Origin: Asterias rubens
Taxonomy: Eukaryota
Length of the DNA stretch: 64,000 nucleotides
Reading direction: 5' to 3'
Assembly (NCBI RefSeq): GCF_902459465.1
Contig: NC_047079.1
Span: 7,316,001-7,380,000 of the forward strand
Below, piece by piece: positions 28,546 to 49,407 of this stretch. The notes under the pieces were generated by a model. That model was not told the origin of the DNA. It did not search any database and saw nothing but the letters and a program-made list of their open reading frames with translations. Each line of letters begins with the position of its first letter. Position 1 is the stretch's first letter. The position numbers were made by a program, and so were the translations under genes.

Positions 28546-29991
28546 CTAAATTGCATAAGAGTGGGTGACTTTTGGGCCAATTACGGTGGCGTACTGTGAC
28601 ATCTCGATGCTTTCAAGAGATTTGTTCGGTTTGGCATACAGTGCGTGGATCGACTCCTTGTGAGCGTGCGTGTCCTTGGACTGTTCGGCCGTCCTCCGTG
28701 GCTCAGTCACGGCGTGGCTGGTTGCCCTTGGTGGGGGAACTGCGGGTGGCTTGGGGTTGCAGCGTGGATCTCCAACAGTCATGTACTCTGATATTGTAAT
28801 GCTTCTCTGTGGTCTTGATGTCAAGCGTGTTGAGTTCCCACTCTCCCGTCTGGTAGAGTCTTGGTCCTTGATGGGAATGGCGCCAGACTGACGTCTGTGT
28901 TTGGCGATTTTGTACAGACACAAGACAGAGACCACAATCATGATTAAGACGACCAGAATGACCCCTATGTAGAGATGAAAACTAGTGAAAGTTCCAGGAG
29001 TGTCTTCTTGTTTACAGTTGGTGATATTGAGAGCTTCGCTTGTCGCATTCAGACCGACGGCATTGGATGCAGAGCATGTCACAATGAGAGAGTTGAACGA
29101 CATGCAGTTGTTGATTCTCAGGAATCTTGAAGTAGCATTCCGGCTTACGTCTTGAAACCCACTATCAGAAACATTCCACGATAACCTACTGGTGCCTTCC
29201 TGCACAGTCCAAGAATAGTGCGACATGTCGGGCACAGCTTCTGATCGACACTCTAAGTGGAGCTCGACCATCCCACTTTCGCTGTTGTACTTTTTGTCGA
29301 CAGCGACAGTAACGTACCCAACCCGCACCTTCAATGGAGTAACCGAGCAGTTGGGCCCCCTCGATCCGCCCCAGCCCGCTATGCATACGAAACGTCCATA
29401 GTTATCGCCCCCGCGAAGGCGATGTTTCACACTACTCGTTGAGCCTGGCTCAATCACGCGTGATTCTGCGAGAAGAGCACTCTGAGCGTTAGTTCGGGCC
29501 GAGTACCATGATAGCAGGGTGGGAACTTTAGTGTTATTTGGTACTCTGCACACCAGTGACACGGTATCATTTACATGTGGGGTCGTTGGATTCAAAGTAC
29601 AGATTGGGGTAGGAGGTTGAACAACAGTCAGATGAGCAGAATCAGAAAGTAGTTTTGAAGATGGCGAACATCTGAGGTCACCTCCTTGCTTGGGACGAAC
29701 TTTGAGAAGCAATAGCGTTGAAATACAGTCTTTAAACAAAACTATTACATCTTGTCTAGCATTTGTCTCTCTGTAAGCAATCGTTGTTGTTGGTGTTCCA
29801 TTAGCCTCCGCCTCATAATAATGAATCCAGACTATTCTCTCGCATTTTTTAGTTCGGCATGTGAACGTCGCGTTGCCTCCAACATCGACAGTAACATCAT
29901 TTGGTTGTATAAAAAACACGCCATTTGATGATGAAGTCCCAAGCACGAATATTTGTATGCTACAGATAAGCAGTAAAATGCATAAAGCCAT
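28546..29991 (-). CDS. Intronless type-I Ig-superfamily receptor (3 Ig domains) with an ITIM-like tail, 481 aa
   Basis: One ORF contains the signal peptide, a V-like domain (QPNDVTVDVGGNATFTC..IVW..LRC), two further Ig domains and TM LYIGVILVVLIMIVVSVLCLY. The tail has SEYMTV, ALYAKP and SQYATV. Confidence 0.9.
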   Translation of the reverse strand: MALCILLLICSIQIFVLGTSSSNGVFFIQPNDVTVDVGGNATFTCRTKKCERIVWIHYYEAEANGTPTTTIAYRETNARQDVIVLFKDCISTLLLLKVRPKQGGDLRCSPSSKLLSDSAHLTVVQPPTPICTLNPTTPHVNDTVSLVCRVPNNTKVPTLLSWYSARTNAQSALLAESRVIEPGSTSSVKHRLRGGDNYGRFVCIAGWGGSRGPNCSVTPLKVRVGYVTVAVDKKYNSESGMVELHLECRSEAVPDMSHYSWTVQEGTSRLSWNVSDSGFQDVSRNATSRFLRINNCMSFNSLIVTCSASNAVGLNATSEALNITNCKQEDTPGTFTSFHLYIGVILVVLIMIVVSVLCLYKIAKHRRQSGAIPIKDQDSTRRESGNSTRLTSRPQRSITISEYMTVGDPRCNPKPPAVPPPRATSHAVTEPRRTAEQSKDTHAHKESIHALYAKPNKSLESIEMSQYATVIGPKVTHSYAI

Positions 29992-31271
29992 ATTAATTCA
30001 GTGATTTAATCAATTAAAACAACAACTGAGGCCTTATAGGTAGTGTGGACTCGGATTAAATGGATCAATGTTATTTCAAATTAACTTATTACAACTAAAA
30101 TTGTTGTGCATTGCTCAGTGAAGATGTTTCCCTTTTCGTTTGCATCAATTTCAGTTTTACATTCGATGTGACTTATTTCAATATTGTTATATGATTATTT
30201 AAATTTTGTTTCCTTTTACAAGAGTGCACTTTGATGTTACACCTATAAATTAACAACCTTGGCAAAATAGCGAAAGAGAAATAGTTTATAGAATGTGTCA
30301 ATTAAAAGCTGAAACAAAAAAAACAAGTTAAACAAAACATTGAATTACTTGTAAAAAAGTAGGTCTACTCTAGGCCTGTGGATCTTGGCACGTTTGATGC
30401 TGAAGTACCGATCAAAATACAGCATCTCTTACAGACGGGGTTAACCACAAATTGACCAAAGTCTGGCGATAAAAACTTTCTAATTGGGAAGCAGCAATTA
30501 GCTAAATGAGTTGGTTACATCACTTTGGTAGAATTGGAGCAATACCCGGGATCCTGCCTAATATTGACAATTCTGACAAATTTCATCATGAAGAAACGCA
30601 CAATTTGATTAACTTGCAACTTGTTATGAACGTCATCTAAAAATTTGCAAAAACCCAAGAACTATCCAATCTCCATTAAGGTGTACGTGGCCGGTGGGGG
30701 CGCCCTGCCCTTCTCTCCTTCCAGCCAAAACTATACCCATATTTGGGAAAATATTCATGTTCATAAAGGTGCAGTAGTAATTATATTAGTGTGGGAACAA
30801 AACTGCCTGTGACCGAAAATAAAACTTATTACAGAGTTTGGTCTCGTAAAAAGAAACGGTATTTCCCGTTTCCTGGTTGCAGCTAAAGTGTGTGAACAAC
30901 TCGTACTACTCCCGTGAAACTGCTGGTTCTCAAGAGCGAACAAAGCAACCTCTTTCGATTTTGGAATCACTCAATTGTTTAGATAGTGGTTGGATACAAC
31001 AACACTTATATGTAAAAATCTCGTTATAAAAGGTGAGATATCGCTGAAGATCAGGAGCAAATGCAAAAGGGAAACTCCCTGAAAGGACACACAATCTGAG
31101 AAGCGTTACAGCAGTATCGCTTCTCGGATTCAAACTTTGGGCATAAATCTGATATATTTTAGGTAACTTCAAAGTGAAGCATTTCTCAAAATGCTTTGTA
31201 AAATCAAAGGCTGCTGTAGGCTTCTAACCCGTCATTATATCTTTTTGAATTACCGAACGTATACATTCCCT

Positions 31272-31560
31272 CTAAAGGCATGGGCACTATTGGTAACTAT
31301 TCAAAGTAATTGTTAGCATACAAACTGACTTGGTAACGAGCAATGGAGAGCTGTTGATAGTATAAAACATTGTAAGAAAGGACCCCTCTGAAGTAACGTA
31401 GTTTTCGAGAAAGAAGTAATTTCTCAGAAATATTTGAAATGAATTCGAGACCTCGAGTTCAAGAATCTGAAAGCACACACAGCTAATATGCGACAATGGT
31501 GTTTTTTCTTCCACTCAACTCTCTTAACCTAGACGACGAATTGTTCAGCTCGTGTTTACT
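31272..31560. mobile_element. Kolobok-like MITE, one-ended
   Basis: CTAA-AGGCATGGGCACTATTGGTAA, followed by the family body (CCCTCTGAAGTAACGTAGTTTTCGAGAAAGAAGTAAT). Confidence 0.7.
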
Positions 31561-33209: not shown

Positions 33210-33566
33210 TAACGCTGTTAAAAACAAATGTGTTCAAATAATAATTATAGTACTTTATACTCAGTTATGACACAATGCATACAAAATATACAAATTTTTA
33301 GTAAAATAGAGGTAACAAAATATCAAGTAGAAAGTTTACAAACTGTTGTTATAAAGTCTTGTTTATATCTTGTATTCAAATCTTGCATATAAAAAGGGCA
33401 AAATCAAGGTACAAATGATTTCCCATCGTTTTCTGAAATAGATAGGCCTAATGCGCCAGTGCGCTTCTCCGTGTTTTTTTTTTTTCTTCTTTTTTTCTTC
33501 TTTTTTTCTTCTTCTTTTTTTTCTTTCTTTTAATTCTTTTAAAGATATAGCTTTCTTTTAACTCTC

Positions 33567-33754
33567 TTAAAGGGAAGGTACACTATTGGTAATTGTCAAA
33601 GACCAGTCTTCTCACTTGGTGTGTCTCAACATATGCAAAATATAACAAACTAATGAAAGAAAAAACACCCTTGTCACACGAAGTTGTGTGCTTTCAGATA
33701 GGAATAAAAGACTTCTAGCTAGAAGTCTTTTATTATTTTAGTGAGAAATTACCT
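33567..33754. mobile_element. Truncated Kolobok-like MITE ending about 18 bp from the stop codon of the Ig gene at 33772
   Basis: TTAA-AGGGAAGGTACACTATTGGTAATTGTCAAAGAC..., with body sequence shared with the copies at 13105 and 46173. Confidence 0.7.
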
Positions 33755-33771
33755 GTATTACAAAATCTATG

Positions 33772-35655
33772 CTACATGGTCTTGTAGGAGATGGTTTCGT
33801 AAGTTTCAAAGTCATCAATCTCTCGAGCCTCGTCGGATTGATCAAGCTGACAAGAGGACCCGCCAAGTCCAACCTCTCCAACTGTCATGTAACTTGGTAG
33901 AGTAATAGGCACCCTGGCTTCATTACTCCCGGTGGTTGGTGTAACACGCGCTGTAAGCTTACTCTTTAGAAGCTGGTTTTTCAATGGGACTTTTGGTTTG
34001 GTAGGCCTAGGGTTAGAAGGCTTGATTCTTACCGAGTCGAGACTGCCGCCAGGGTTGACTTTTTCAGGGTCAGGATTGGCTGGGTGGGATGTCTCCTTTG
34101 TTGTTGAGCTCACTGCATGCTTTAGGGGGTGCTGTACATCAGGGGAAGGGGGCGCACCGATTAAATGATAGTCGGGTACTTGGAGTGGATTGGTATCCTC
34201 AACCTGAACTGAAGCTTCGACCTCTGGGTGCTTAACATCAGTGGAAGACTCGCAGCAAGCCCCATGGTCGGTCACGACTGGGAGTGGACGGCTGGTAGCC
34301 CCTATCTGTACTGGGGGTGGACGGCTGGTAGCCCCAATCTGTACTGGCGCTTCAACCCGGGATACAGTAACCGTGGTCGTGTCGCTATCTACTGCGGTAC
34401 CTACTGTGGTGTTCTCAATCGGGCTGTAGTGATTCGGACTTGGGTCAACGCTTGCCTGATTGGTCTGCTCTATGTCATCGTTACTTGACATGGTGTGAGG
34501 AGCAACACTAGTGGTGGGTCTGTAAATCTTCCTGTTCCTCCTGATGACTACAATGATGATTATGGTTACCAAAATGAGAGCTGATACAACGATGATGATT
34601 ATGAGCGCGATTGGGATAACCCAAGCTCCATTGGTCTTACCGGTGCGATTGCACTCTTCAATGTTCCCTGCCACAAAACGGCCGTCGGTACATTGCAATA
34701 TAGTCACTGGTTCACTCATCTTGCTCATACCGATGTCATTATGAGCTGTGCACCTCACCTGTAGACCAGCATCTCTCTCTGTGATGTTGTACACGATGAG
34801 CATATTCGATGTCAACTCAAAACCTCTTCGACTTTCGTTGCGAACATCCACCCAAGTTTGATCTGAGTCGTTCTGGAAGCTGGTATCGACGGCCCAGTCG
34901 AACTCCGTTGCCTCAGGAACCGCCTCCGCATCACATTCTAATCTTAGAGAAAAATTTTGAGAGTCAAAACCGAGAAAATTTACGGTAACGATCATGTCAA
35001 TTTGGAGGGGTGTCACTGTGCAGTTTGGTCCCTCTGTTGGCTGACCGGCAACACATATAAACTTCTTGTAGTTGTCTGTCTCTTTCAATACTAACTGTAC
35101 GGTGTGTGATGAACCAGGCTCGACGTTGCGTGTTATATTTGGGGTTATACGCCATGTTAGTTTAGTTGAAACAACACTCTCTACTGGAACTTTGCAGCTC
35201 AAAGAAACTTTGTCTCCTACCACAGTGTTTTTGGATGAAGTTGAACACATTGGAGTTGGTGGATTCACTACCTGCAAATGTGCACAGTTTGAAAAGTTAT
35301 TTTTGTCTGTATTAAGCCAACACGCGTACATCCCAGCGTCACCAAGTTGTACATTGCTTATTTGGAACTGACTGGATTTGTTCTGAAACAAGATGGAGAA
35401 CCGAGTGGTATCCACACCAGGATTCAAAGTTGGTGCAAGGCACGTCCCAATAGTCAAATAAGAACCACTGTCGCAACCTGACTTCGAATATACCCAGGAA
35501 ACACCGCCACACTCGTAGTCTTGGTTGAAGACGCACTTAAATGTTGCAACGCCCCCAACGGCAACCGTAACATTTTCTGGATCTGCCAAGAAAATGATAG
35601 CTCCTATAAACGACACCTTTAAGCAGCAGAGGATAAAGACAACCGCTGTTTCCAT
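33772..35655 (-). CDS. Intronless type-I Ig receptor, paralogue A (V-like + 2 Ig domains + TM + long Pro/Ser/Thr tail with YxxPhi motifs)
   Basis: The ORF extends to 35721, but paralogues start at MET (35655). Signal peptide METAVVFILCCLKVSFIGA; D1 FKC..SW..DAGMYAC; TM AWVIPIALIIIIVVSALILVTIIIIVVI; tail YSPI, YHLI, YMTV, YETI and YKTM. Confidence 0.9.
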   Translation of the reverse strand: METAVVFILCCLKVSFIGAIIFLADPENVTVAVGGVATFKCVFNQDYECGGVSWVYSKSGCDSGSYLTIGTCLAPTLNPGVDTTRFSILFQNKSSQFQISNVQLGDAGMYACWLNTDKNNFSNCAHLQVVNPPTPMCSTSSKNTVVGDKVSLSCKVPVESVVSTKLTWRITPNITRNVEPGSSHTVQLVLKETDNYKKFICVAGQPTEGPNCTVTPLQIDMIVTVNFLGFDSQNFSLRLECDAEAVPEATEFDWAVDTSFQNDSDQTWVDVRNESRRGFELTSNMLIVYNITERDAGLQVRCTAHNDIGMSKMSEPVTILQCTDGRFVAGNIEECNRTGKTNGAWVIPIALIIIIVVSALILVTIIIIVVIRRNRKIYRPTTSVAPHTMSSNDDIEQTNQASVDPSPNHYSPIENTTVGTAVDSDTTTVTVSRVEAPVQIGATSRPPPVQIGATSRPLPVVTDHGACCESSTDVKHPEVEASVQVEDTNPLQVPDYHLIGAPPSPDVQHPLKHAVSSTTKETSHPANPDPEKVNPGGSLDSVRIKPSNPRPTKPKVPLKNQLLKSKLTARVTPTTGSNEARVPITLPSYMTVGEVGLGGSSCQLDQSDEAREIDDFETYETISYKTM

Positions 35656-36241: not shown

Positions 36242-39200
36242 TCATGAGCTTTGTAGCCGCATGTACTCATGCGCAGTCGTCTCTCTATCACCAAGTTCCA
36301 TGTATTCTCTATCCCCGGGAAGCTCGTACTCCCCACCGTCTGGTTCCCTGACGTCAGACACAGCTTTTCTGTCACTTTGTCGAGCTGAAACCTTCTTGAC
36401 GAGTCGACCTAATCGACGATCCATTCTCATTTTCCGTGGTATCGCGGTTTCTCGTTGTATCTCACGAGATTGGGATTCTTGATATTTGGGGACTTGGTAC
36501 CCTTCGTCGTCTATCACCCTCCCGTCTGAACCTCCTGCCTCCTCTGACGTCATCGGTGTGTCACGTGGTCCTTCTGAAGCAGAGACGGCGCCCATTGGTG
36601 ATGAGATGGGCGCCATTATAGTTCCAATAGAAGTTGCGTAATAACTCGTCTGGCATCCTTCTCCTTGCAAGCCTTGCCTTTGGTGTGTTAGCTTAACAGG
36701 GGTTTTAGGGGCTGCCAGAATCTTCTGTCTTTTAATTATGCAGACGACCATTGGCATAACAGTTACAGACACTGATAAAATTGCAATGACCACCCACACG
36801 TAAAAGGGTATTGGCTGACTGCATTTCTCTGTGCACCCAGACACGCCACAGTCGTCGGTACATTGCAATATAGTCACTGGTTCACTCGTCTTGCTCATAC
36901 CGATGTCATTATGAGCTGTGCACCTCACCTGTAGACCAGCATCTCTCTCTGTGATGTTATACACGGTGAGTAGATTCGATGTCAACTCAAAACCTCCTCG
37001 AGTTTCGTTGCGAACATCCACCCAAGCTCGATTTGAGTCGTTCTGGGACCCGGTCTCGACGGCCCAGTCGAACTCCGTTGCCTTAGGAACCGCCTCCGCA
37101 TCACATTCTAATCTTAGAGAAGAATGTTGAGAGTCAAAATCGAGAAAATTCACGTTAACGATCATGTCAATTTTGAGGGGTGTCACTGTGCAGTTTGGTC
37201 CCTCTGTTGGCTGACTGCCGGCAACACATATAAACTTCTTGTTAGTCGACTCCCGTTATAACGAGGTCCGCCGGACTGGCCCATTTTCCTCGTATTATCC
37301 GAACCTCGTTATAAACGCAGCGCGCTAAATATAGATACACACGTCATCATTGTGCATGCACACAACACGTGTATGTGCATATACATTGTACACAACACGT
37401 GTACGTGTATATACACTTGTGTTAGCCTGCACGGAGCTGTTTGCTTATCAGAACAGCTATTACGAGCATCTTGTACACAAGAATATCATTGCTAAATGTC
37501 TTTTATTGAGTGATTAATCAGGGAAATGTAATATTTTGTACAATTTATGATAACAATATAGCAAAGAGATGTCAACTTGCCGTTCAGAGCGAGTGGATTC
37601 TGCCGCGTAGCGCATGGTATGAACATGATGCATGCACTGAACGTTCATTTTCGTTGGTGATCGACATGGAGTATCATGATAACAGCATGTCAAGCGTGGG
37701 ACACCAGCGAGATGTTTCTGGAGTTCCGTTGCACATGGACTGAAGGGAGTGATGATTGTATAAAGGAGCTTGTTTCAGTTGTTTGCCGTTTCCTTTTTTA
37801 GCTGTTCCGATCCAGTTGTTTTGTTTCATTTTTCAATTTCTCCTTTTAATTCTTATAACAGTATTTAATTCATTAAATCTTTGTGTATCTGTGTCTTTTA
37901 AAATAATTTTCTTTTTGATTTATATTATTGATTTAATAAAATCTTTGCGTATCTGTGTCTTTTAAACCATCTCTATCTTTTGATGTGATTGAATTAAATA
38001 TTCCGGACGGGCAACCTTTGTTTTTTTCTTTCTTTTCTTAAAAAAAAAACATTTTTGGAAACGGGGGAATCTTTATTCATTGAATTGTTATTATTGAATT
38101 AATAATAATATTTTTCATTGAAAAAGGGGCTCTACTAAAAAAAAAAAACTCGAACAGCGGTGACGTTTTTGAAGTTTTGCATGGATGATACGAGCAAGGA
38201 ATAATCATTAGAACCCCCAAATACTGCCGAGTGCGTTCGCCGACATGAATTTATTAAGAAAGCGGCATGTTTTTGAAATTGAGAAGGATTGTCGTCAGTG
38301 GTTTTGAGCCACGCGCGTGATTTAAGCCCTCTATTGTCTGCTTGGGTAAACCAGTCCGTTGAATAGACTGGTGGCACTCTACGAGCACCATGCAATTATC
38401 ACCTCTATTGTATTGATCATGGGGTTTAAGGGCTTCATGTCATTTCTCAACCTTGACGAAGGTAAGCTTTTTTTACACACTTATTCCAGGCCCTCGCTCC
38501 AAACGTCTGAAAACAATACATTTTGTCTCCAAGGGACCGCAAAATTACCTCGTTATAACCGTGTTCTCGCTACTTCCGTGCTCGTATAATCCATATTTTA
38601 ATGCATTGAAACACGCACGGGGCAGTTCGGGACCGGCAAAAAACCTCGTAATAACCGGAACCTCGTTACATGCGAGCTCGTAATAACGGGAGTCGACTGT
38701 AGTTGTCTGCCTCGTTCAATACTAAATGTACGGTGTGCGATGAACCAGGCTCGACGTTGCGTGTTATCTTAGGGGTACGCCATGTTAGTTTAGTTGAAAC
38801 AACACTCTCTACTGGAACTTTGCAGTTCAAAGAAACTGTGTCTCCTACCACAGTGTTTTTGGATGAAGTTGAACACATTGGAGTTGGTGGATTCACTACC
38901 TGCAAATATGCACAGTTTGAAATAATGTTTATGTCTGTAAGCCAACACGCGTACATCCCAGCATCACTGAATTGTACATTGTTAATCTGGAACTGACTGG
39001 AATTATCATTAAACGAGAATGAAAACCGAGTGGTATCTACACCAGGAAGCAAAGTTGGTGAACGGCATACGCCGATACTTGCTAAGGAATCTCTGTCGCA
39101 ACCTGACTTCGAAGATACCCAACCAACAAATCCACACTCGTAGTCCTGGTTTAAGGCACACTTAAATGTTGCAACGCCCCCAACGGCAACCGTAACATTT

Positions 39201-39280
39201 TCTGGATCTGCCAAGAAAATGATAGCTCCTATAAACGACACCTTTAAGCAGCAGAGGATAAAGATAAGCGCTGTTTCCAT
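36242..39280 (-). pseudogene. Ig receptor paralogue B, split by a 1.46-kb transposon insertion in Ig domain 2
   Basis: The 5' ORF 39280-38666 (signal, D1, D2 up to EADNY) and the 3' part 37242-36242 (KKFICVAG...D3, TM, tail) join into a colinear paralogue once 37243-38699 is removed. Confidence 0.88.
37243..38699. mobile_element. Non-autonomous Tc1/mariner (pogo/Tigger-like) element
   Basis: TIRs (T/C)AGTCGACTCCCGTTATAACGAG and CTCGTAATAACGGGAGTCGACTG, followed by TA at 38700-38701. The intact paralogue reads CTTCTTG-TA-GTTGTC at this site. Subterminal CCTCGTTATA repeats are present. No transposase ORF was seen. Confidence 0.85.
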
Positions 39281-39871: not shown

Positions 39872-41503
39872 TCATGAGCTATGTAGCCCCATGTACTCAT
39901 GCGCAGTCGTCTCTCTATCACAAAGATCCATGTATTCTCTATCCCCGGGAAGTTCATATTCCCCATCGTCTGGCTCACTGACGTCAGACACAGCTTTTCT
40001 GTCACTTTGTCGAGCTGAAACCTTCTTGATGAGTCGACCTGATCGACTATCCATACTCAATATGCGTGGTATCGCGGTTTCTCGTTGTATCTCACGAGGT
40101 TGAGATTCGTGATATTTTGGGACTTGGTACCCGTCGTCGTCCATAATCATCCCGTCTGAACCTCCTGCCTCCTCTGACGTCATCCTCCCGTCTGAACCTC
40201 CTGCCTCCTCTGACGTCATCGGGGTGTCATGTGGTCCTTCCGAAGCAGAGACGGCGACCATTTGTGAGATTGGCACCATTCTAGTATCAATAGAAGTTGC
40301 GTAAAAACTCGTCTGGCATCCTTCTCCTTGTAAGCCTTGCCTTTGATGGGTTGGCTTAATTGGGGTTTTAGGGGCTGCCAGAATATTCTGTCTTTTAATG
40401 ATGCAGACGACCATTGTCATAACAGTTACAGACACTGATAAAATTGCAATGACCACCCACACGTAAAAGGGTATTGGCTGACTGCATTTCTCTGTGCATC
40501 CAGACACGCAACAGTCGTCGAGACTTTGCAATACAGTAACTGGCTCACTCGTTTCGCCAACTATGACGTCATTATGAGCTGTGCATCTTACCTGCAGACC
40601 AGTGCCATTTTCGTAAACATATTTCTTGACCATCACTAGAAATCTTTCTGCCTCGATAAACTCATATGTGTTGGATGCATTAATGTTCTTCCATTCCATC
40701 GACGGATCTTTAACCAACCAATCATACCTCGTAACCGCTGGTACCGCGAACGCAACACATTCTAAAAGAAACGTCGACTCGGAACCGTCTTCATCCGGGA
40801 GGATACCAATATGAACCTTGACCCTGGTCGTCATAGGAACCCTCAGTGGTGAAGCCACCGTGCAGTTCGGACCTTTGTCTGTATTGTAACCAGCAATGCA
40901 CATGAACTGTCCGTTATTATCTGTTTCTGTGAGAACATGCAGGGTAACTAACTCCATTGCGCTTTGTGTCGTTCTGATTATGCGCGTTGGCTCCACTGAC
41001 CAGGTAAGTTGTGTACCGACTGTCAGGTTTTCCGGCACTTTACAGGTCAGCATAACAGTTTCCCCTAGCGCGGCATTTTCGTGTGGGTAAACCGTACATA
41101 CAGGAGTAGGGGTTTGGACAACCTGCAAATGTGCACAGTTTGAAACTTTGTTTATGTCTGTAAGCCAACACGCGTACATCCCAGCATCACTGAATTGTAC
41201 ATTGTTAATCTGGAACTGACTGGAGTTGCCAGTGAACGAGAAGGAGAACCGAGTGGTATCCACTCCAGGATCCAAACTTGGTGTACGGCATACGCCAATA
41301 CTGGAATAAGAACTTGTGTCGCAACCTGATTTCGAATATACCCAGGCAACACTTCCACACTCGTAGTCTTGGTTGAAGACGCACTTAAATGTTGCAACGC
41401 CCCCAACGGTAACCGTAACATTTTCTGTATCTGCCAAGAAAATGCTAGCTCCTATAAACGACACCTTTAAGCAGCAGAGGATAAAGAAAACCACTGTTTC
41501 CAT
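39872..41503 (-). CDS. Intronless type-I Ig receptor, paralogue C, with an ITAM-like tail, 543 aa
   Basis: Signal peptide, 3 Ig domains, Cys-rich stalk DDCCVSGCTEKC and TM FYVWVVIAILSVSVTVMTMVVCII. The tail ends YELPGDREYMDLCDRETTAHEYMGLHSS. Confidence 0.92.
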   Translation of the reverse strand: METVVFFILCCLKVSFIGASIFLADTENVTVTVGGVATFKCVFNQDYECGSVAWVYSKSGCDTSSYSSIGVCRTPSLDPGVDTTRFSFSFTGNSSQFQINNVQFSDAGMYACWLTDINKVSNCAHLQVVQTPTPVCTVYPHENAALGETVMLTCKVPENLTVGTQLTWSVEPTRIIRTTQSAMELVTLHVLTETDNNGQFMCIAGYNTDKGPNCTVASPLRVPMTTRVKVHIGILPDEDGSESTFLLECVAFAVPAVTRYDWLVKDPSMEWKNINASNTYEFIEAERFLVMVKKYVYENGTGLQVRCTAHNDVIVGETSEPVTVLQSLDDCCVSGCTEKCSQPIPFYVWVVIAILSVSVTVMTMVVCIIKRQNILAAPKTPIKPTHQRQGLQGEGCQTSFYATSIDTRMVPISQMVAVSASEGPHDTPMTSEEAGGSDGRMTSEEAGGSDGMIMDDDGYQVPKYHESQPREIQRETAIPRILSMDSRSGRLIKKVSARQSDRKAVSDVSEPDDGEYELPGDREYMDLCDRETTAHEYMGLHSS

Positions 41504-41862: not shown

Positions 41863-42114
41863 CTATAGGTCCGGTGCGAGAGGAGATGTCTCTCTGTAAA
41901 CGGTCGTTGATGTTGAGGTTCCATTGGCCTCCGCCTCATAGTAACGAATCCAGACTATTCTCTCGCATGTTTGCGTCCGGCATGTGAACGTCGCGTTGCC
42001 TCCAACTTCGACAGTAACATCATTCGGTTGTATAGAAAACACGCCATTTGATGATGAAGGCCCAAGTACGAATATTTGGATGCCACAGATAAGCAGTAAA
42101 ATGCATAAAGCCAT
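41863..42114 (-). pseudogene. 5'-only fragment of a duplicate of the 28546-29991 Ig gene
   Basis: MALCILLLICGIQIFVLG...YYEAEANGT is nearly identical to the N-terminus of the 481-aa gene. Homology stops at about 41887 and the ORF ends in unrelated sequence (SPLAPDL). Confidence 0.85.
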
Positions 42115-43280
42115 TTTAATTCAGGGAGTTTATCAATTAAAACAACAACTGAGTCCAGAAGACGCCTTATAGGTAGCTTGGGCATGTGGATGAAATGATT
42201 CTGTTATTTCAAATTGACTTATTACAACTAAAATTGTGGTTCGTTGCTCAGTGAAGATGTTTCCCTTTTCGTTTGCATCAATTTCAGTTTTGCATTCGAT
42301 GTGACTTATTTCAATATTGTTATACGATTATTTGATTTTACTTTCTTTTACTCCCAAGAGTGCACTGTGATGTCAGTTTGTTACACTTGAAAATTAACAA
42401 CCTTGGCAAAATAGCGAAAGAGAAATAGTTTATAGAATGTGTCAATTAAAAGCTGAAACACAAAAAGTTCAAAACACCATAGAAGTTAAACAAAACATTG
42501 AAAAACTTGTAAAGTAGGTCTACTCTAGGCATGTGGCTCCCGGGCCCGTTTGATGATATGAAGTACCGATCAAAATACAGCATCTCTTACAGACGGGGTT
42601 AACCAAATTGACCAAAGTTGGACGAAGAAAAACCTTTCTAATTGGGAAGCAGCAATTAGCTAAATGAGTTGGTTACATCAGTTTGGTAGAATTGGAACTA
42701 TAATGTGAGGATCCTGCCTTATTGGCAATTCTGACCAATTTCAATCAAGAAACACAGAAATTCTACAATTTGATTAACTTGCAACTTGTTATGAACAACA
42801 TCTAATAAAAAACTTTAAAAAAAATCAAGAACAACTCATTCAGGTTTACATTTCCGGTGGGGGCGCCCTGCATTTCTTCCCAGCCAAAACATACCCATAA
42901 TATTTGAAATAAATGTTCATGTTTATAAAGGTGCAGTTATAATCATAATAGTGTGACAATAAAACTGCCTGTGAACGAAAATAAAACTTATTACAGGGTT
43001 TGGTCTCATAAAAAACAGTATTTCCCGTTTCCTGGTTGCAGCTTAAGTGTGTGAACAACTCGTTCAAATTGAGTGGCTGACACTTGACTATACTACTCTG
43101 GTTCTAAGAGCGAACAAAATAGCAACCTCTTTCGATTTTGGAACCACTCAATTGTTTAGATAGTGGTTGGATACAACAACACTTACATGGAAAAATCTCG
43201 TTATAAAAGGTGAGATGTCGCTGAAGATCAGGAGCAAATGCAAAAGGGAAACTCCCTGAAAGGAACACACAAACTTGATT

Positions 43281-43352
43281 TGCCAAGAAAATGCTAGCTC
43301 CTGTAAACGACACATTTAAGCAGCAGAGGATAAAGAAAACCGCTGTTTCCAT
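43281..43352 (-). pseudogene. Signal-peptide-only fragment of a MET-type Ig paralogue
   Basis: METAVFFILCCLNVSFTGASIFLA, then an abrupt switch at about 43275 into sequence homologous to 31092 and below. Confidence 0.8.
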
Positions 43353-43937
43353 TTTAGTAGTGATCGAGTTGAAAGCAGAAGCTATAATGACCGAATTGCT
43401 CATAACATTATTTGCCATTATACCAGCTATATTTGTACACGCCATCGGGAGGTCGTTTCCTGCTTACTGACTATTACCTTCGATATTACGGGGCTTCACC
43501 ATATTTCTGTCCTACTTTACCGCTCCCTTTTCACATATTTCTCTTCCTTTCCTTCCCCTTCTTTCATTTTCTTTAATTTTTCTTTTTCTATAAAAAGTAT
43601 TTATGCTTTGCTTTCAGTCTTCAAGAATCACATACTGATTTTTGTTATGAACCCTTTAGATTTGATTTCCATTTTCTTTCTTTTTTTCGTCTCCCTTTTT
43701 CCTAAATCTTCTTCATCTTCTTTTTTTCTTTCTATTCCCCGTCAAGTAGATATTTTTCTGTTTACCTATTTGTTAACTTAATTTTTGTATAAAAAGCTGA
43801 TGAGTAATGATGATTTTGACAGATTTGATAGTCGGCTCACAGCTGGAGATTCGATTAAAATGAATTGTTGTCTGAGTCCAGACTAGACAGAGACAACCCC
43901 TCTATTCGTTTCGTCAATAATTGTTTGTTATGAATAT

Positions 43938-45524
43938 TCATGAGCTATGTAGCCCCATGTACTCATGCGCAGTCGTCTCTCTATCACAAAGATCCATGTA
44001 TTCTCTATCCCCGGGAAGTTCATACTCCCCACCGTCTGGTTCACTGACGTCAGACACAGCTTTTCTGTCACTTTGTCGAGCTGAAACCTTCTTGATGAGT
44101 CGACCTGATCGACGATCCGTACTCAGGTTCCGTGGTATCGCGGTTTCTCGTTGCCTCTCACGAGATTGAGATTCGTGATATTTGGGGACCTGGTACCCGT
44201 CGTCGTCCATTATCATCCCGTCTGAACCTCCTGCCTCCTCAGACGTCATCGGTGTGTCACGTGGTCCTTCTGAAGCAGAGACGGCGCTCATTGGTGAGAC
44301 GATGGGCACCATTCTAGTATCTATAGAAGTTGCGTAATAACTCGTGTGGCATCCTTCTCCTTGTAAGCCTTGCCTTTGGTGTGTTGGCTTCATGGGGGGT
44401 TTAGGAACGTTCAGAATCTTCCGTCTTTTAGTGATGCAGACGACCATTGCCATAACAGTTACAGCCACTGATAAAATTGCGATTACTACCCACAAGGGTA
44501 TTGGCTGACTGCATTTCTCTGTGCATCCAGACACGCAACAGTCGTCGAGACTTTGCAATACAGTAACTGGCTCTCTCGTTTCGCTGACACTGACGTCATT
44601 ATGAGCTGTGCATCTAACCTGCAGACCAGTGCCATTTTCGTAAACAGATTTCTTGACCATCACTAGAAATCTTTCTGCCTCTATAAACTCATATGTGTTG
44701 GATGCATGAATCTTCTTCCATTCCATCGACGAATCATTAACCAACCAATCATACCTCGTAACCGCTGGTACCGCGAACGCAACACATTCTAAAAGAAACG
44801 TCGACTCGGAACCGTCTTCATCCGGGAGGATACCAGTATGAACCTTGACCCTGGTCGTCATAGGAACCCTCAGTGGTGAAGCCACCGTGCAGTTCGGACC
44901 TTTGTCTGTATTGTAACCAGCAATGCACATGAACTGTCCGTTATTATCTGTTTCTGTGAGAACATGCAGGGTAACTAACTTTATTCCGCTTTGTGTCGTT
45001 CTGATTTGGCGCGTTGGCTCCACTGACCAGGTAAGTTGTGTACCGACTGTCATGTTTTCCGGCACTTTACAGGTCAGCAAAACAGTTTCCTCTACCGCGG
45101 CATTTTCATGTGGGTCAATTGTACATGTGGGGGTTCCGACAACCTGCAAATGTCCACAGTTTGAAACTTTGTTTATGTCTGTAAGCCAACACGCGTACAT
45201 CCCAGCATCACTGAATTGTACATTGTTAATCTGGAACTTACTGGAGTTGCCACTGAACGAGAAGGAGAACCGAGTGGTATCCGCATCAGGGTTGAAATTT
45301 GGTGTACGGCATGTCCCAATGGTAAAATAAGAATAACTGTCGCAACCTGACTTCGAAGATACCCAGGAAATACTTCCACACTCGTAGTCTTGGTTGAAAA
45401 CGCACTTAAATGTAGCAACGCCTCCAACGGCAACCGCAAAATTTTCTGGATCTGCCAAAAAAATGCTAGCTTCTGAAAACGACACCTTTAAGCAGCACAG
45501 GATAAAGACAACCACTGTTTCCAT
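43938..45524 (-). CDS. Intronless type-I Ig receptor, paralogue D, with an ITAM-like tail, 528 aa
   Basis: Same architecture as 39872-41503. D3, stalk and tail are nearly identical, while D1 is more divergent. The tail ends EYMDLCDRETTAHEYMGLHSS. Confidence 0.92.
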   Translation of the reverse strand: METVVVFILCCLKVSFSEASIFLADPENFAVAVGGVATFKCVFNQDYECGSISWVSSKSGCDSYSYFTIGTCRTPNFNPDADTTRFSFSFSGNSSKFQINNVQFSDAGMYACWLTDINKVSNCGHLQVVGTPTCTIDPHENAAVEETVLLTCKVPENMTVGTQLTWSVEPTRQIRTTQSGIKLVTLHVLTETDNNGQFMCIAGYNTDKGPNCTVASPLRVPMTTRVKVHTGILPDEDGSESTFLLECVAFAVPAVTRYDWLVNDSSMEWKKIHASNTYEFIEAERFLVMVKKSVYENGTGLQVRCTAHNDVSVSETREPVTVLQSLDDCCVSGCTEKCSQPIPLWVVIAILSVAVTVMAMVVCITKRRKILNVPKPPMKPTHQRQGLQGEGCHTSYYATSIDTRMVPIVSPMSAVSASEGPRDTPMTSEEAGGSDGMIMDDDGYQVPKYHESQSRERQRETAIPRNLSTDRRSGRLIKKVSARQSDRKAVSDVSEPDGGEYELPGDREYMDLCDRETTAHEYMGLHSS

Positions 45525-46946: not shown

Positions 46947-47052
46947 TGTTACTACACCGTACACACTGGATATGCCATGATAACCCAGGCTTGACCGTTC
47001 CTAAAGGGGTGTCAATCAATATGAACCGGCGGGGCAGCAGACAACTCTGCCA

Positions 47053-47255: not shown

Positions 47256-48129
47256 CATCCTTTGTGTACAAACTTAGTTTGCCCGACTGCCATTGATAAA
47301 TCAAACCAATATCAAACTTTTAAATTTTAAAATTGATTGTAAGAAAACAAATAAGCTTAAATAAACCCAGGCACTACATGGACATGTAAGATTAAAATAA
47401 CGCCGAATAATTTACGGAGAACACCGTGAAGACAAAAATGTGGATGATCGGCCATCCTACGTATCATTATGCTGACAGTAAATTTAAAATATCACGTAGT
47501 TTTAATTGGGGTTTGTGGTAGGTTTTGTATTAAAACTGTGTTCTTTCTTTTCTTTTTGCTACTCAAAGTAGACAAGGAAAAACCCTTTATTCCTACCCTT
47601 GATCGAATCTGATATCGGTGTATCACTCCAAAATAACGATAGTGAAAGCTATGAAGTGAAACACATCAAATTGAATTTTCATTTTACTATTTTTTTTATA
47701 TTTTTTTTATTGAAAAGAAATTATTTAATTAAATATGATCATAATGTAAGTAGCTAACGAAACTTCCCAATGTTTTTCAAGTCAGTTTAAAGTTCCCCTT
47801 TGTGCTTTCTATTATTGACTAATAAAAGGGCGTGGAACAAACAAATGACCTCGTCAAAAGTGAAAGAAAAACCTTGTTAGAAAGGCTCATGTGGTTTTTA
47901 CTCCCGGTTATGACGTGCAGAAGTATTATTGATATTATTTTCACTACGCCCTTACATTTTATAGACCGAAGATGGTCACTGCTGTTGAGCTGTGAAGAAT
48001 CCCAACCTGGGACAGAATAAGGCTGATCTTATTGACTCTAATTAAATGAAGAGTAAAGTCAAATTATTTACATTAACTTGGCTAATTAATTGAGTTACAA
48101 TCGGGTTTGGTGTTAAAGTTGTTGTCAAG

Positions 48130-49407
48130 ATGGCGTCAGTTCTACACAGCCTCGCCATTCTGCTGGTTGCTACATTGGTGTGCTATGTAAAAAGCAACGT
48201 CAATGTGACCACTACGTCAATCATGAACAGCGAACTCAACCCAACATCTTCCGGAGGCTCAGTTTGGTTCCCTGAGGATCAACTAGGAGTGACTGTCTGT
48301 TTGCTGGCTCGTGAGGAGGGGGCAGACGTCTTAAACATCACCCTTGAATGCAGAACAATGCCTTCTTATCAAAATGTCTCATGGAGTATCAAGAAAGCAA
48401 CGGGTACCTCATGGGTGAACATTGAGGCTATCTCTGATGAGAGGTTTGAGGTTTCTTTGAGGCAACTTCGAATATCAAGAGTAACCCTCCAACAAGATAA
48501 TGGTCTTATGGTGAGATGCCTCAATTTGTGTACTCGTATCAACGACGCGTTCACAGTCACATACCATGGACAAAATATGAGTAACGAAAACACATGTCCA
48601 TTTAACGCAATCACAGATGCAAACCGAACAGATTTGAATCAGAATTTCAACACCACGTGCTTCACCGACACACCCAGGCAACTGCACCCTATAGTCTTCA
48701 TGTGGGTCGCCATAGTTGTCGTTGCTTTAGGCGTTTGCCTGGTTGGTGTACTATGTTATATTTCTTCAAGCAAGCGACAACGAGGTGAGCGTGGTGAGGG
48801 AGGTGAGAGAGATGACATGGGTGGTGAGTCAGGTGTAGGACCGTCTAGTGGTGAAGCTCAAGCTCGAGGCAAGGGTAGCCTGGACACAGTGTACTCATCA
48901 CCTAGAGATATCTGTAGTTCTAATACCCTATCGAGGATCCAGGCATTTCTGTCACCGAAGAGACCGGCATCTACGTCCATTGGAAACACTCCCTCAGCCG
49001 AAGACGTAGACGCACCACAAGCCGCTTTGGACCAACCTGAAAAGTCATCCACTGTACGCTTGAAACGTGTAAAGCGTTTTAGTGCAAAGAAAACGGTTGC
49101 TGAACCGGCTGCAGGGACGTCTAATGATGATGTTCCAGCTACACCTGGAGATAAGCTTGGCATGATTTATTCAATACCTCGAGAGATCCGTAAGTCAAGC
49201 ACTCTGTCCAGAATCCAAACATTGCTGTCCACCAAGAAAGCGCACTCTACATCAAAGGCTGATGAAGGACTAGACACAGCCGCCGCCGTGGACCAACCCG
49301 AGCCAGAGACGCCCAAATTGCGCTCAAAAGTCCGAAATGCAAATACACGTGTAAAGACTATCTCAGGTGAGGGCTGGCTGGATGATAGACCGTATGTAAA
49401 TGTATAG
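48130..49407 (+). CDS. Intronless type-I receptor with one Ig-like domain, an internally repeated tail and C-terminal YVNV, 425 aa
   Basis: Signal peptide MASVLHSLAILLVATLVCYVKS. Ig-like ITLEC...VSWSI...LRISRVT..DNGLMVRC resembles D3 of the neighbouring genes. TM IVFMWVAIVVVALGVCLVGVLCYI. The tail has two copies of YS.PR(D/E)I..S.TLSRIQ. Confidence 0.88.
   Translation: MASVLHSLAILLVATLVCYVKSNVNVTTTSIMNSELNPTSSGGSVWFPEDQLGVTVCLLAREEGADVLNITLECRTMPSYQNVSWSIKKATGTSWVNIEAISDERFEVSLRQLRISRVTLQQDNGLMVRCLNLCTRINDAFTVTYHGQNMSNENTCPFNAITDANRTDLNQNFNTTCFTDTPRQLHPIVFMWVAIVVVALGVCLVGVLCYISSSKRQRGERGEGGERDDMGGESGVGPSSGEAQARGKGSLDTVYSSPRDICSSNTLSRIQAFLSPKRPASTSIGNTPSAEDVDAPQAALDQPEKSSTVRLKRVKRFSAKKTVAEPAAGTSNDDVPATPGDKLGMIYSIPREIRKSSTLSRIQTLLSTKKAHSTSKADEGLDTAAAVDQPEPETPKLRSKVRNANTRVKTISGEGWLDDRPYVNV

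What the first reader, a model, noticed from the sequence alone, without database searches (positions are those of the whole stretch)
28546..49407. Cluster of intronless Ig receptors with opposite-sign signalling tails: candidate paired-receptor immune or allorecognition locus
Seen in the sequence: within 21 kb there are four intact 3-Ig type-I receptors, one transposon-split copy, two truncated fragments and one 1-Ig relative. Each CDS runs from signal peptide to stop without introns. The tails fall into classes: ITIM-like (28546 gene), ITAM-like (B, C, D), multi-YxxPhi (A) and Grb2-type YVNV (48130). Established: tandem Ig families with mixed ITIM/ITAM signalling and birth-and-death evolution characterise vertebrate paired receptors (KIR, LILR, SIRP, CEACAM, Siglec) and the Hydractinia Alr complex. 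Inference: this may be an uncharacterised echinoderm analogue. I do not recognise it as a named family.
Basis: partly seen in the sequence, partly recalled or inferred. Interest (0 to 1): 0.9.

Follow-up and report, generated by a model that had tools for sequence, protein, structure and literature searches.

The report
Sea star Ig receptor gene cluster
A sea star locus holds a tandem cluster of intron-free, three-Ig-domain surface receptor genes with interchangeable tyrosine-signalling tails. It is an undescribed branch of the echinoderm KirrelL cell-fusion receptor family, built like vertebrate paired receptors, with no evidence yet for an immune role.

Summary
Between 28546 and 49407 there are four intact single-exon 3-Ig type I receptor genes (G1, A, C, D). 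There is also one copy (B) split by a 1.45 kb terminal-inverted-repeat element, two 5' fragments, and a probable 1-Ig gene (H) on the other strand. G1 has two ITIM-consensus sites, B/C/D have YxxL-x9-YxxL, and H ends in YVNV.

The family is not nameless. It forms a well-supported separate clade inside the echinoderm-specific, intronless KirrelL/Kirrel2L/Hypp1164 Ig-TM superfamily, whose studied member drives fusion of skeleton-forming cells. Relatives in sea urchin, crown-of-thorns starfish, brittle star and feather star are also single-exon and tandem.

A paired-receptor-like design is real. Near-identical ectodomains carry two unrelated TM/tail cassettes in both sea star and sea urchin. Mosaic copies arose with different junctions. 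The core of the V-like D1 is hypervariable.

The "ITAM" is a genus-level duplication of an older YMxM/L site, no TM has a charged residue, and dN/dS stays below 1. ITIM/ITSM-like tails also occur in the skeletogenic paralogues. Expression is essentially untested, so an immune or allorecognition role is unproven. The scan noted a Kirrel-like intronless 3-Ig gene elsewhere in this genome (s1-172764).

The parts
28546..29991 (-). G1: single-exon 3-Ig type I receptor, 481 aa. The tail has SEYMTV (28774-28791), LYAKP (28627-28641) and SQYATV (28582-28599), and ends in SYAI.
   Evidence: ORF, Pfam Ig domains, TM and motifs. The syntenic A. amurensis orthologue XP_071806002.1 is 90% identical, is also single-exon, lies next to a guanylate cyclase gene and keeps both ITIM-type sites.
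33772..35655 (-). A: single-exon 3-Ig receptor, 627 aa from the homologous Met (the ORF extends to 35721). It has a long class II tail with PSYMTV (33880-33894 covers SYMTV) and a terminal YETISYKTM (33775-33801).
   Evidence: The A. amurensis counterpart is at L001:3040-5088.
36242..37243 (-). B, 3' half: end of domain 2, an A-type domain 3, then a C/D-type Cys-rich stalk, TM and class I tail with YMELGDRETTAHEYMRL (36254-36304).
   Evidence: tblastn, alignment, sliding identity map, motif check.
37244..38698 (.). Non-autonomous DNA transposon of about 1.45 kb, with 25-nt terminal inverted repeats and subterminal short repeats, inserted in domain 2 of B.
   Evidence: Sequence read, inverted repeat I1, a 22-nt terminal-repeat pattern that matches only at 37244-37265 and 38677-38698, with none in shuffles.
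38699..39280 (-). B, 5' half: signal peptide, D1 and the start of D2, all A-type.
39872..41503 (-). C: single-exon 3-Ig receptor, 543 aa. The class I tail has DDGYQVP (40118-40138), YELP and YMDL-x9-YMGL (39884-39934). The D1 hypervariable core is 41138-41362.
   Evidence: AlphaFold model of the ectodomain: pLDDT 85, three beta-sandwich domains.
41884..42114 (-). Truncated G1-like 5' fragment. The duplicated block, which includes about 1 kb of G1 upstream DNA, spans roughly 41887-43185.
   Evidence: tblastn 84% over 77 aa. blastn of L001 8982-10228 onto 43185-41887.
43254..43418 (-). Truncated A-like 5' fragment: leader plus signal peptide only.
   Evidence: tblastn 72% over 57 aa. ORF 43104-43445.
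43938..45524 (-). D: single-exon 3-Ig receptor, 528 aa, 85% identical to C. Same class I tail, with YMDL-x9-YMGL at 43950-44000.
48130..49407 (+). H: single-exon type I membrane protein with one probable Ig-like domain. The tail has two YSxPR repeats and an invariant C-terminal GW.D.RPYVNV (YVNV at 49393-49404).
   Evidence: ORF and TM. hhalign to family domain 3, E=8.5e-5. Homologue P0157 is 54% identical. The A. planci ORF L003:6832-7686(-) lies beside the 3-Ig genes on the opposite strand and has the same C-terminus.

Best explanation
The locus is a tandem, birth-and-death cluster of a so far undescribed subfamily of the echinoderm-specific, intronless KirrelL-type Ig-TM receptor superfamily.

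Shown:
- Each gene encodes a signal peptide, a V-like D1, two C2/I-like Ig domains, a Cys-containing stalk, one uncharged TM helix and a tyrosine-rich tail.
- The subfamily predates the sea star / sea urchin split.
- Its coding sequence is single-exon in every echinoderm class examined here.
- Two unrelated TM/tail cassettes are repeatedly combined with ectodomains that stay similar within a species. Class I is short, with DDGYxxP followed by a terminal EYMxM/L. Class II is long and Pro/Ser-rich, with EYM(T/A)VG.
- Recombination has made mosaic copies with different junctions in two related sea stars.
- Sequence variation peaks in the C-C'-C'' and F-G loop region of D1.

Inferred mechanism:
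- D1 contacts a ligand on another cell, either homophilic or a polymorphic partner.
- Clustering lets Src-family kinases phosphorylate the tail tyrosines.
- Class I tails, whose YMxL site is doubled in Asterias-type species, recruit activating SH2 proteins: PI3K p85 and Crk/Nck-type adaptors, possibly Syk.
- G1-type and class II tails recruit SHP-type phosphatases or Csk.
- H docks Grb2 through its terminal pYVNV.

In short, these are cell-contact sensors with alternative signalling outputs. In architecture they work like paired receptors. In ancestry they are closest to the KirrelL and nephrin/Neph type of adhesion-signalling receptor. The tissue (immune, skeletogenic, other) is not established.
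For: Gene structure and domains.

Family placement:
- A search of 1.84 billion representative proteins gave echinoderm hits only among the named ones.
- P0082 has a C-terminus identical to Aplc_Kirrel2L in the supplement of PMC8903837. P0055 matches the Hypp1164 tail. P0141 carries the KirrelL tail motif.
- The ML tree puts the window genes, with P0002-P0006 and P0011, in a clade supported 95/87, apart from the KirrelL/Kirrel2L clade.

Intronless state: the gene spans of relatives in A. amurensis, S. purpuratus, A. planci, A. rubens, Antedon and Amphiura equal 3 x (aa+1). PMC8903837 states that kirrelL lacks introns in all echinoderms examined.

Tandem arrays and synteny.

Two tail classes on similar ectodomains: in S. 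purpuratus, type 1 and type 2 ectodomains are 77-85% identical (69% over one shorter segment) but their TM/tails show no similarity. Weak cross-species tail matches pair type 1 with C (E=0.002) and type 2 with A (E=0.02).

Mosaic junctions and the D1 hypervariable core.

At least weak purifying selection: dN/dS 0.5-0.7.

Motif statistics.

Sea stars express Syk, Grb2, PLC-gamma, Csk, Abl and Src-family kinases (PMC11593052).
Against: - No direct expression or binding data. RNA runs of the related species gave almost no reads at the 95% threshold. The one run with coding-only coverage is only guessed to be RNA.
- None of the window's proteins, and no A-, C- or D-type protein, is present in the 15-billion-protein collection. 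They lack even automatic annotation support.
- dN/dS of 0.5-0.7 is high and could reflect relaxed constraint.
- All SH2 assignments rest on motif consensus alone.
- The three S. purpuratus type 2 copies carry frameshifts or a deletion in that assembly, so the antiquity of the class II cassette rests on degraded copies and short motifs.
Confidence: 0.62

Rival explanations
1. The cluster would be an immune or allorecognition paired-receptor locus. Inhibitory copies (G1, possibly A) and activating copies (B, C, D) would be expressed on coelomocytes or epidermis. They would recognise polymorphic self/non-self ligands or pathogens through the variable D1, signalling through SHP-type phosphatases versus Syk.
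For: - Paired architecture, recurrent mosaics and D1-focused variation with dS 3-5 times the locus background. This is compatible with old allelic lineages or gene conversion.
- ITIM consensus sites in G1 are conserved in A. amurensis.
- The ITAM-like tandem site is conserved in all class I tails of both species.
- Language-model look-alikes are CD22, Siglec and G6f-like clusters.
- Public DNA contigs over the locus differ from the window at many sites.
- Syk is present in sea stars.
Against: - The characterised relative, KirrelL, acts in skeletogenic cell fusion. Kirrel2L and Hypp1164, grouped with it as PMC-specific Ig-domain proteins, carry ITIM/ITSM-like tails.
- The ITAM spacer is 9 residues, and the second site is a recent duplication.
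- No charged TM residue.
- dN/dS is below 1 in D1.
- No evidence of expression in immune cells.
Confidence: 0.25
2. These would be plain adhesion or fusion molecules of the KirrelL / CADM / nectin type. They would act by homophilic or heterophilic trans-binding in a developmental or structural tissue, for example adult skeletogenic cells or syncytium-forming cells. The tail diversity would be tissue-specific wiring to the actin machinery, as in nephrin/Neph, with no opposing-sign logic.
For: - Superfamily membership.
- The best structural matches of the ectodomain model are CADM1-4/Necl-4, followed by DIPs, CD22 d1-3, nectin-1, SIRP-alpha and Kirrel2.
- NCBI names the sea urchin and Acanthaster relatives 'cell adhesion molecule 2-like'.
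- The ancestral tail sites YxxP and YMxM fit Crk/Nck and PI3K docking, as known for nephrin-type receptors (the docking specificities are from my own knowledge).
Against: - Adhesion orthologues are usually single-copy and conserved. Here there is copy turnover, mosaics, a hypervariable D1 core and dN/dS of about 0.6.
- The CADM/nectin tail hallmarks (FERM-binding site, C-terminal PDZ ligand) are absent from A, C and D.
- Identity to CADMs is only 15-19%.
Confidence: 0.3
3. These would be gamete or egg-surface recognition receptors. A fast-evolving V domain would bind a partner on the other gamete, and the YxxP/YMxL tail would start the Src-family kinase / PLC-gamma calcium pathway at fertilisation.
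For: The rapid, D1-focused divergence is typical of reproductive proteins. The sea star egg pathway uses SFK1/3 and PLC-gamma SH2 domains, and its receptor is unknown (PMC11593052).
Against: Nothing links these genes to gametes. Tandem paired-tail clusters are not a known feature of gamete receptors.
Confidence: 0.05
4. The genes would be decaying, non-functional duplicates: open reading frames kept by chance in a young segmental duplication.
For: One copy is transposon-split, two are fragments, and the sea urchin copies are degraded. The genes are unannotated and dN/dS is high.
Against: - Five frames of 1.3-1.9 kb are intact.
- G1 and A are intact in a species with about 8% neutral divergence.
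- dN/dS is below 1.
- Cys, Trp and motif positions are conserved across echinoderm classes.
Confidence: 0.05

Closest known systems
Echinoderm KirrelL / Kirrel2L / Hypp1164 'PMC-specific Ig-domain proteins' (Khor and Ettensohn 2022, PMC8903837; Ettensohn and Dey 2017, as cited there)
   Same: - Echinoderm-restricted.
- Coding sequence without introns.
- Signal peptide, three Ig-like domains, one TM and a tyrosine-rich tail.
- Detectable sequence homology, E 1e-5 to 1e-9 against 1.84 billion proteins.
- Shared tail modules: YAKP in G1 and Kirrel2L, and YA-x-hydrophobic sites near the C-terminus.
   Different: - A separate, well-supported clade with only 25-30% identity.
- Arranged as a multi-copy tandem cluster with two exchangeable tail cassettes, mosaics and a hypervariable D1.
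- kirrelL is treated in that paper as a single-copy gene with a well-conserved protein sequence.
- Skeletogenic expression and Alx1/Ets1 control were not tested here.
Vertebrate paired receptor clusters (SIRP, KIR/LILR, CD33-related Siglecs, CEACAM, PILR)
   Same: - Tandem IgSF genes.
- Ectodomains kept similar while tails differ.
- ITIM-consensus sites in one member.
- Gene fragments and mosaics.
- Variation focused on the membrane-distal V domain.
   Different: - No sequence orthology.
- Genes are intronless, where the vertebrate genes have one exon per domain.
- The putative activating copies carry their own tandem YxxL site with a 9-residue spacer. They do not have the short tail and charged TM residue that recruit DAP12 or FcR-gamma.
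- No expression or function data.
CADM/Necl and nectin adhesion molecules
   Same: Best structural matches for the whole V-C2-C2 ectodomain (Foldseek E about 1e-14). Three-Ig type I layout. This is also the source of the automatic name 'cell adhesion molecule 2-like' for relatives.
   Different: - 15-19% identity.
- No FERM-binding or PDZ-ligand tail motifs in A, C or D.
- Extra cysteines in D1 and the stalk.
- Intronless.
- Multi-copy and fast-evolving.
Nephrin / Neph (Kirrel) IRM receptors
   Same: Ig adhesion receptors whose tails are tyrosine-phosphorylated and recruit Nck, Grb2 and PI3K to drive actin remodelling and cell fusion. The YxxP, YMxM and YVNV sites found here fit those partners (consensus knowledge, not tested).
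   Different: Nephrin and Neph have 5-8 Ig domains (plus FN3 in nephrin) and multi-exon genes. There is no specific sequence relationship beyond general IgSF similarity.
Hydractinia Alr allorecognition complex
   Same: An invertebrate tandem family of Ig-like receptors with a variable N-terminal domain and ITIM/ITAM-like tails.
   Different: Not compared by any tool here. No allorecognition phenotype maps to this locus.

Membership tests
Echinoderm KirrelL-type intronless Ig-TM superfamily | Coding sequence in a single exon | tested here: met
   There are uninterrupted frames in the window. Gene spans of relatives equal the CDS length in six echinoderm genomes. The paper's statement on kirrelL agrees.
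Echinoderm KirrelL-type intronless Ig-TM superfamily | Signal peptide, three Ig-like domains, one TM, cytoplasmic tail with tyrosine motifs | tested here: met
   Pfam, hydropathy and motifs, AlphaFold model with three beta-sandwich domains at pLDDT 85.
Echinoderm KirrelL-type intronless Ig-TM superfamily | Significant sequence homology to named members | tested here: met
   Hits from gene C:
- P0082, whose C-terminus is identical to Aplc_Kirrel2L: E=2.4e-7.
- P0055, Hypp1164-type tail: E=2.0e-9.
- P0141, KirrelL tail motif: E=7.4e-5.

The tree joins them in one family. The named sequences themselves could not be aligned, because they are available only as text in a supplement.
Echinoderm KirrelL-type intronless Ig-TM superfamily | Orthology to kirrelL itself (same clade; skeletogenic expression under Alx1/Ets1) | tested here: not met
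   The window genes fall in a different clade, supported 95/87, from the KirrelL/Kirrel2L clade, supported 97/95. Expression and regulation were not testable.
Paired activating/inhibitory immune receptors | Clustered genes with closely similar ectodomains but different TM/tails | tested here: met
   A versus B: 90-98% nucleotide identity over most of the ectodomain (76-84% in the D1 core), then unrelated tails. S. purpuratus type 1 versus type 2: 77-85% ectodomain identity (69% over one shorter segment), with no TM/tail similarity.
Paired activating/inhibitory immune receptors | Inhibitory member with an ITIM, (S/I/V/L)xYxx(I/V/L) | tested here: met
   G1 has SEYMTV and SQYATV, kept in A. amurensis as SEYMTV and SQYATI. 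A has PSYMTV, which fails at position -2. This is a motif match only; phosphatase binding was not tested.
Paired activating/inhibitory immune receptors | Activating member with a charged TM residue that recruits an ITAM adaptor | tested here: not met
   There is no Lys, Arg, Asp or Glu inside any predicted TM segment.
Paired activating/inhibitory immune receptors | Expression on immune cells and opposite functional effects | not testable with these tools
   The read-laying runs were uninformative.
Canonical ITAM | YxxL/I, then 6-8 residues, then YxxL/I | tested here: not met
   The spacer is 9 residues in B, C and D. Only the broad 6-12 definition is met.
Canonical ITAM | Both tyrosine sites conserved in distant orthologues | tested here: not met
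   The S. purpuratus and A. planci clade members have a single terminal YMEM.
CADM / nectin | V-C2-C2 ectodomain fold | tested here: met
   The top Foldseek hits are Necl-4 (5zo2, 5zo1) and CADM1-4 at E about 1e-14. TM-scores are low (0.3), as expected for flexible multi-domain chains.
CADM / nectin | Juxtamembrane FERM-binding motif and C-terminal PDZ ligand (EYFI, or E/A-x-Y-V) | tested here: not met
   The C-termini are ...GLHSS (C, D)...RLQSS (B) and ...SYKTM (A). G1 ends in ...SYAI, which only loosely resembles a class II PDZ ligand.

The most novel reading that the evidence does not exclude
Echinoderms may possess an ancient, independently evolved paired activating/inhibitory IgSF receptor system that predates the sea star / sea urchin split. 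It would be built from retrogene-like single-exon genes. Ectodomains would be homogenised within species while two signalling cassettes are preserved, and the hypervariable V-like domain would mediate self/non-self (allograft) or pathogen recognition on coelomocytes. The conserved neighbour H would serve as a Grb2-docking co-receptor.
Probability: 0.2. Interest if true: 0.85.

Novelty: new variant of a known kind. Interest (0 to 1): 0.55.

Why it matters
Echinoderms reject allografts and have large innate immune gene families. I found no description of a cell-surface IgSF receptor system with alternative signalling tails in them. This locus, with its counterparts in sea urchin and crown-of-thorns starfish, gives a concrete and testable candidate.

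It also shows that the KirrelL superfamily, known only from skeleton-forming cells, contains fast-evolving multi-copy branches. An intronless multi-Ig gene family that has persisted and diversified for roughly 450-500 million years (the divergence age cited in PMC8903837) is a useful case of how a probable retrogene can seed a receptor family.

If the genes prove to be ordinary adhesion molecules, the value is smaller. It would amount to unannotated genes to add to sea star gene sets, and a caution that ITIM- and ITAM-like motifs alone do not indicate immunity.

Tried and rejected
- **Word-index protein search with gene C.** No hit. This reflects its length and word filters, because the exhaustive search found relatives.
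- **PDB sequence searches with one protein and with the family profile.** Only generic multi-Ig hits such as titin, Robo and antibodies. They do not discriminate.
- **Read laying.** The raw RNA runs belong to a related species. At the 95% threshold they gave 3-10 partial reads, so absence of expression cannot be claimed. X13 and X5 cover intergenic DNA as well, so they are no evidence of transcription. No splice joints were seen in the genes; the joints listed lie in high-copy repeats.
- **Positive selection.** Nei-Gojobori dN/dS by domain never exceeded 1 in D1 (0.5-0.73). The values above 1 in D3 rest on 1-3 synonymous changes. Orthology is also blurred by gene conversion. I therefore do not claim positive selection.
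- **Structure of H.** Confidence was too low for a fold search.
- **Bacterial promoter/terminator scan.** Irrelevant for a eukaryotic locus.
- **Direct alignment of the published KirrelL, Kirrel2L and Hypp1164 sequences.** They are available only as supplement text and I did not paste them. I identified database hits by short diagnostic tail motifs instead.
- **Exact transposon target-site duplication.** Reading the junction against paralogue A suggests a 2-bp duplication, but I could not settle it.

Full report
**What is there**

The region contains eight family elements. ORF listing and tblastn of the family against the whole window give:
- G1 at 28546-29991(-)
- A at 33772-35655(-)
- B in two pieces, 38699-39280(-) and 36242-37243(-)
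- C at 39872-41503(-)
- D at 43938-45524(-)
- a G1-like 5' fragment at 41884-42114(-)
- an A-like 5' fragment at 43254-43418(-)
- H at 48130-49407(+)

Every intact gene is one open frame from a hydrophobic leader, through one uncharged TM helix, to the stop. Pfam finds V-set, I-set, Ig_2, Ig_3 and ig matches above threshold in all genes but H. An AlphaFold model of the C ectodomain, built on 26 family sequences, has pLDDT 85 and three beta-sandwich domains.

B is interrupted inside domain 2 by a 1.45 kb element. Its 25-nt terminal inverted repeats lie at 37244-37268 and 38674-38698. A 22-nt pattern from the repeat matches the window only at these two sites.

H has no Pfam hit. It aligns to family domain 3 by profile comparison (E=8.5e-5, probability 60%), has the Cys-Trp-Cys pattern, and is predicted all-beta between residues 55 and 143, at low confidence.

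**Tail motifs**

- G1 has SEYMTV and SQYATV, both fitting the ITIM consensus, plus LYAKP and a terminal SYAI.
- B, C and D have DDGYQVP, YELP and YM(D/E)L-x9-YM(G/R)L.
- A has PSYMTV and a terminal YETISYKTM.
- H has two YSxPR repeats and a terminal YVNV.

Shuffling each tail gives p of about 0.006, 0.01 and 0.0005 for the G1, C and H patterns. These are post hoc tests. The tandem YxxL site fails the strict 6-8 spacer definition of an ITAM.

**Organism and synteny**

The named relatives are all echinoderm. An Asterias amurensis locus (L001) is collinear with the window at 91-93% nucleotide identity, intergenic DNA included. The order is the same: a class I tail end, a mosaic copy, A, G1, then a guanylate cyclase gene. 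The window therefore comes from a forcipulatid sea star close to, but not identical with, A. amurensis.

None of the window's proteins is in the 15-billion-protein collection. No A-, C- or D-type protein from any Asterias species appeared in the exhaustive search. These genes are effectively unannotated.

**Family placement**

The exhaustive search with C found 197 proteins at E up to 0.001. The closest full-length relatives are:
- Acanthaster planci XP_022090162 and XP_022081681
- Strongylocentrotus purpuratus XP_030845435, named 'cell adhesion molecule 2-like'
- the A. amurensis G1 orthologue

More distant relatives come from Amphiura, Patiria and the crinoid Antedon.

A literature search led to Khor and Ettensohn 2022 (PMC8903837). 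That paper reports that kirrelL lacks introns in all echinoderms examined, may have arisen by retrotransposition, and is required for fusion of skeletogenic cells. Its supplement lists KirrelL, Kirrel2L and Hypp1164 as 'PMC-specific Ig-domain proteins'.

Three of my database hits can be tied to these proteins:
- P0082 has exactly the C-terminus of Aplc_Kirrel2L.
- P0055 has the Hypp1164 tail.
- P0141 has the KirrelL tail motif.

A maximum-likelihood tree of 39 ectodomains puts the window genes in a clade with P0002-P0006 and P0011 (support 95/87). That clade lies inside this superfamily but apart from the KirrelL/Kirrel2L clade. The family is therefore a new branch of a known, little-studied echinoderm group, not a nameless one.

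**Intronless and tandem everywhere**

For relatives in A. amurensis, S. purpuratus, A. planci, A. rubens, Antedon and Amphiura, the called gene span equals the coding length. The single-exon state is therefore ancestral for the superfamily.

Tandem arrangement is also general:
- four copies in 17 kb in S. purpuratus
- two to three copies in A. planci
- pairs in A. rubens and Antedon

In A. planci an H homologue lies next to the 3-Ig genes on the opposite strand, as in the window. It ends in the same GW.D.RPYVNV sequence.

**Paired architecture**

A sliding identity map shows how the mosaic copies were built.
- B is A-like (90-98% outside the D1 core) to the end of domain 3, then C/D-like (85-96%) through stalk, TM and tail.
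- The A. amurensis mosaic is A-like through the TM and juxtamembrane region, and only then switches to the class I tail.

These are two different junctions.

In S. purpuratus, the intact gene (type 1) has a short tail with DDGYEIP and SEYMEM. Its ectodomain is 77-85% identical (69% over one shorter segment) to three neighbouring type 2 copies. Those copies have a different TM and a long tail containing VPEYMAVGG. The TM/tail parts of the two types show no similarity.

Across species the tails correspond weakly. Type 1 matches C (E=0.002) and type 2 matches A (E=0.02). They share the short modules DDGYxxP plus EYMxM/L, or EYM(T/A)VG.

Both lineages thus keep two signalling cassettes on ectodomains that stay similar within a species but are only about 40% identical between species. 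This is the pattern seen in vertebrate paired receptors. One caveat applies: the three sea urchin type 2 copies carry frameshifts or a deletion in that assembly.

**Variation**

Between copies, and between the two sea star species, the D1 core (about codons 48-122) is 74-88% identical at the nucleotide level (up to 96% between the youngest duplicates, C and D). Flanking segments are mostly 88-98%. The variable positions fall in the C strand, the C'-C'' region and the F-G loop of the modelled V-like domain.

Nei-Gojobori estimates against A. amurensis give dN/dS of 0.62 for G1 and 0.67 for A. D1 dS is 0.22-0.26, against roughly 0.01-0.16 in the other domains. High dS and high dN together point to gene conversion or old lineages, not to recent positive selection. 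Orthology is itself blurred by conversion. I claim rapid, D1-focused diversification and not positive selection.

**What the tails say**

The 'ITAM' of B, C and D is a local doubling of the terminal EYMx-hydrophobic site. The sea urchin and Acanthaster clade members have one YMEM, a classical PI3K p85-type site, preceded by a YxxP site.

G1's first ITIM-type site, SEYMTV, looks like the same module with Val at +3. Its YAKP and C-terminal YA-x-hydrophobic sites recur in Kirrel2L.

Many distant superfamily members end in LVYAxLDL, then about 20 residues, then TxYAxI. This is an ITIM plus ITSM-like pair like those of SIRP-alpha, PZR or PD-1 (the vertebrate comparison is from my own knowledge). 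It includes the Hypp1164 type, and Kirrel2L carries a related (L/V)YADLDL ... (V/A)(D/A)YAxL pair; the KirrelL paper lists both types as skeletogenic-cell-specific. Such motifs are therefore no evidence for immunity in this family.

No TM has a charged residue. Sea stars do express Syk, Grb2, PLC-gamma, Csk, Abl and Src-family kinases (PMC11593052), so partners exist.

**Structure comparison**

Foldseek ranks Necl-4/CADM1-4 first (E about 1e-14). DIPs, CD22 d1-3, nectin-1, SIRP-alpha, basigin, Kirrel2 and IgLONs follow. All are three-Ig ectodomains at 14-20% identity. This confirms the V-C2-C2 layout and explains the automatic 'CADM2-like' name, but it does not establish membership. The CADM/nectin tail hallmarks are missing.

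**Expression**

Raw RNA runs of the related species gave 3-10 partial reads on C and D. This is uninformative given the roughly 8% divergence and the 95% threshold.

One contig set guessed to be RNA (X1) covers only parts of the G1, A, C and D coding regions plus a stretch downstream of A. Apart from high-copy repeats, it covers none of the intergenic DNA. A marine metatranscriptome has one exact 151-nt contig in G1. This is weak evidence of transcription and says nothing about tissue.

**Verdict**

The best-supported reading is a new, fast-evolving, multi-copy branch of the KirrelL-type intronless Ig-TM superfamily. It encodes cell-contact receptors with two ancient, exchangeable phosphotyrosine-signalling cassettes and a conserved single-Ig, Grb2-site neighbour.

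The locus works like a paired-receptor cluster in architecture. Whether it serves immunity or allorecognition (about 0.2-0.25), tissue adhesion or fusion (about 0.3), or something else needs expression and binding data.

Noticed in passing
window 16105-26661 (+); L001:13804-19412: A membrane guanylate cyclase gene lies directly beside G1. The last large exon, 25852-26661, ends the cyclase domain and continues into a Glu/Lys-rich repeat. The same neighbourhood is kept in A. amurensis. Another note of the scan (s1-150582) covers it.
   Followed up: partly
window 31252-31448 and 33419-33812: Two short segments have summed contig word depths of 1e5-1e6 in every sea star run, with many irregular joints. 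This indicates a very high-copy interspersed repeat. One segment abuts the stop codon of gene A and overlaps the last 41 bases of its coding sequence.
   Followed up: no
L004 (ENA metagenome contig ERZ1764465 k141_1360994), 632-1426: A 264-aa ORF (P0001) is identical to C through domain 3, stalk and TM, then switches to the B-type tail. This would be a third mosaic junction, found in another individual or species. The 630 bases upstream match nothing in the window, so the contig may be truncated by another insertion or be chimeric.
   Followed up: partly
L001:913-2530 (A. amurensis): The mosaic copy (A-type ectodomain and TM, class I tail) has a frameshift in domain 2 in that assembly. It is either a pseudogene or a sequencing error.
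   Followed up: partly
window 51931-54324 (-): A 797-aa single open frame, Ser/Pro/Lys-rich and without any Pfam match, flanks the cluster on the H side.
   Followed up: no
window 35656-35721, 43353-43445; L001:913-1005, 3040-3132: The in-frame leader upstream of the homologous start Met (...NSVIIAAA.NSITTK-MET...) is conserved among A-type copies, the A-like fragment and A. amurensis. Either the 5' UTR is conserved or an upstream Met is used.
   Followed up: no
window 40460-40500 (C), 44480-44520 (D), 36800-36840 (B): Class I copies have a Cys-rich stalk (DDCCVSGCTEKC) just outside the membrane. A has a two-Cys stalk. This could allow disulfide-linked dimers. Another note (s1-172764) mentions a juxtamembrane Cys cluster in a Kirrel-like gene elsewhere in this genome. 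The coordinates given are approximate.
   Followed up: no
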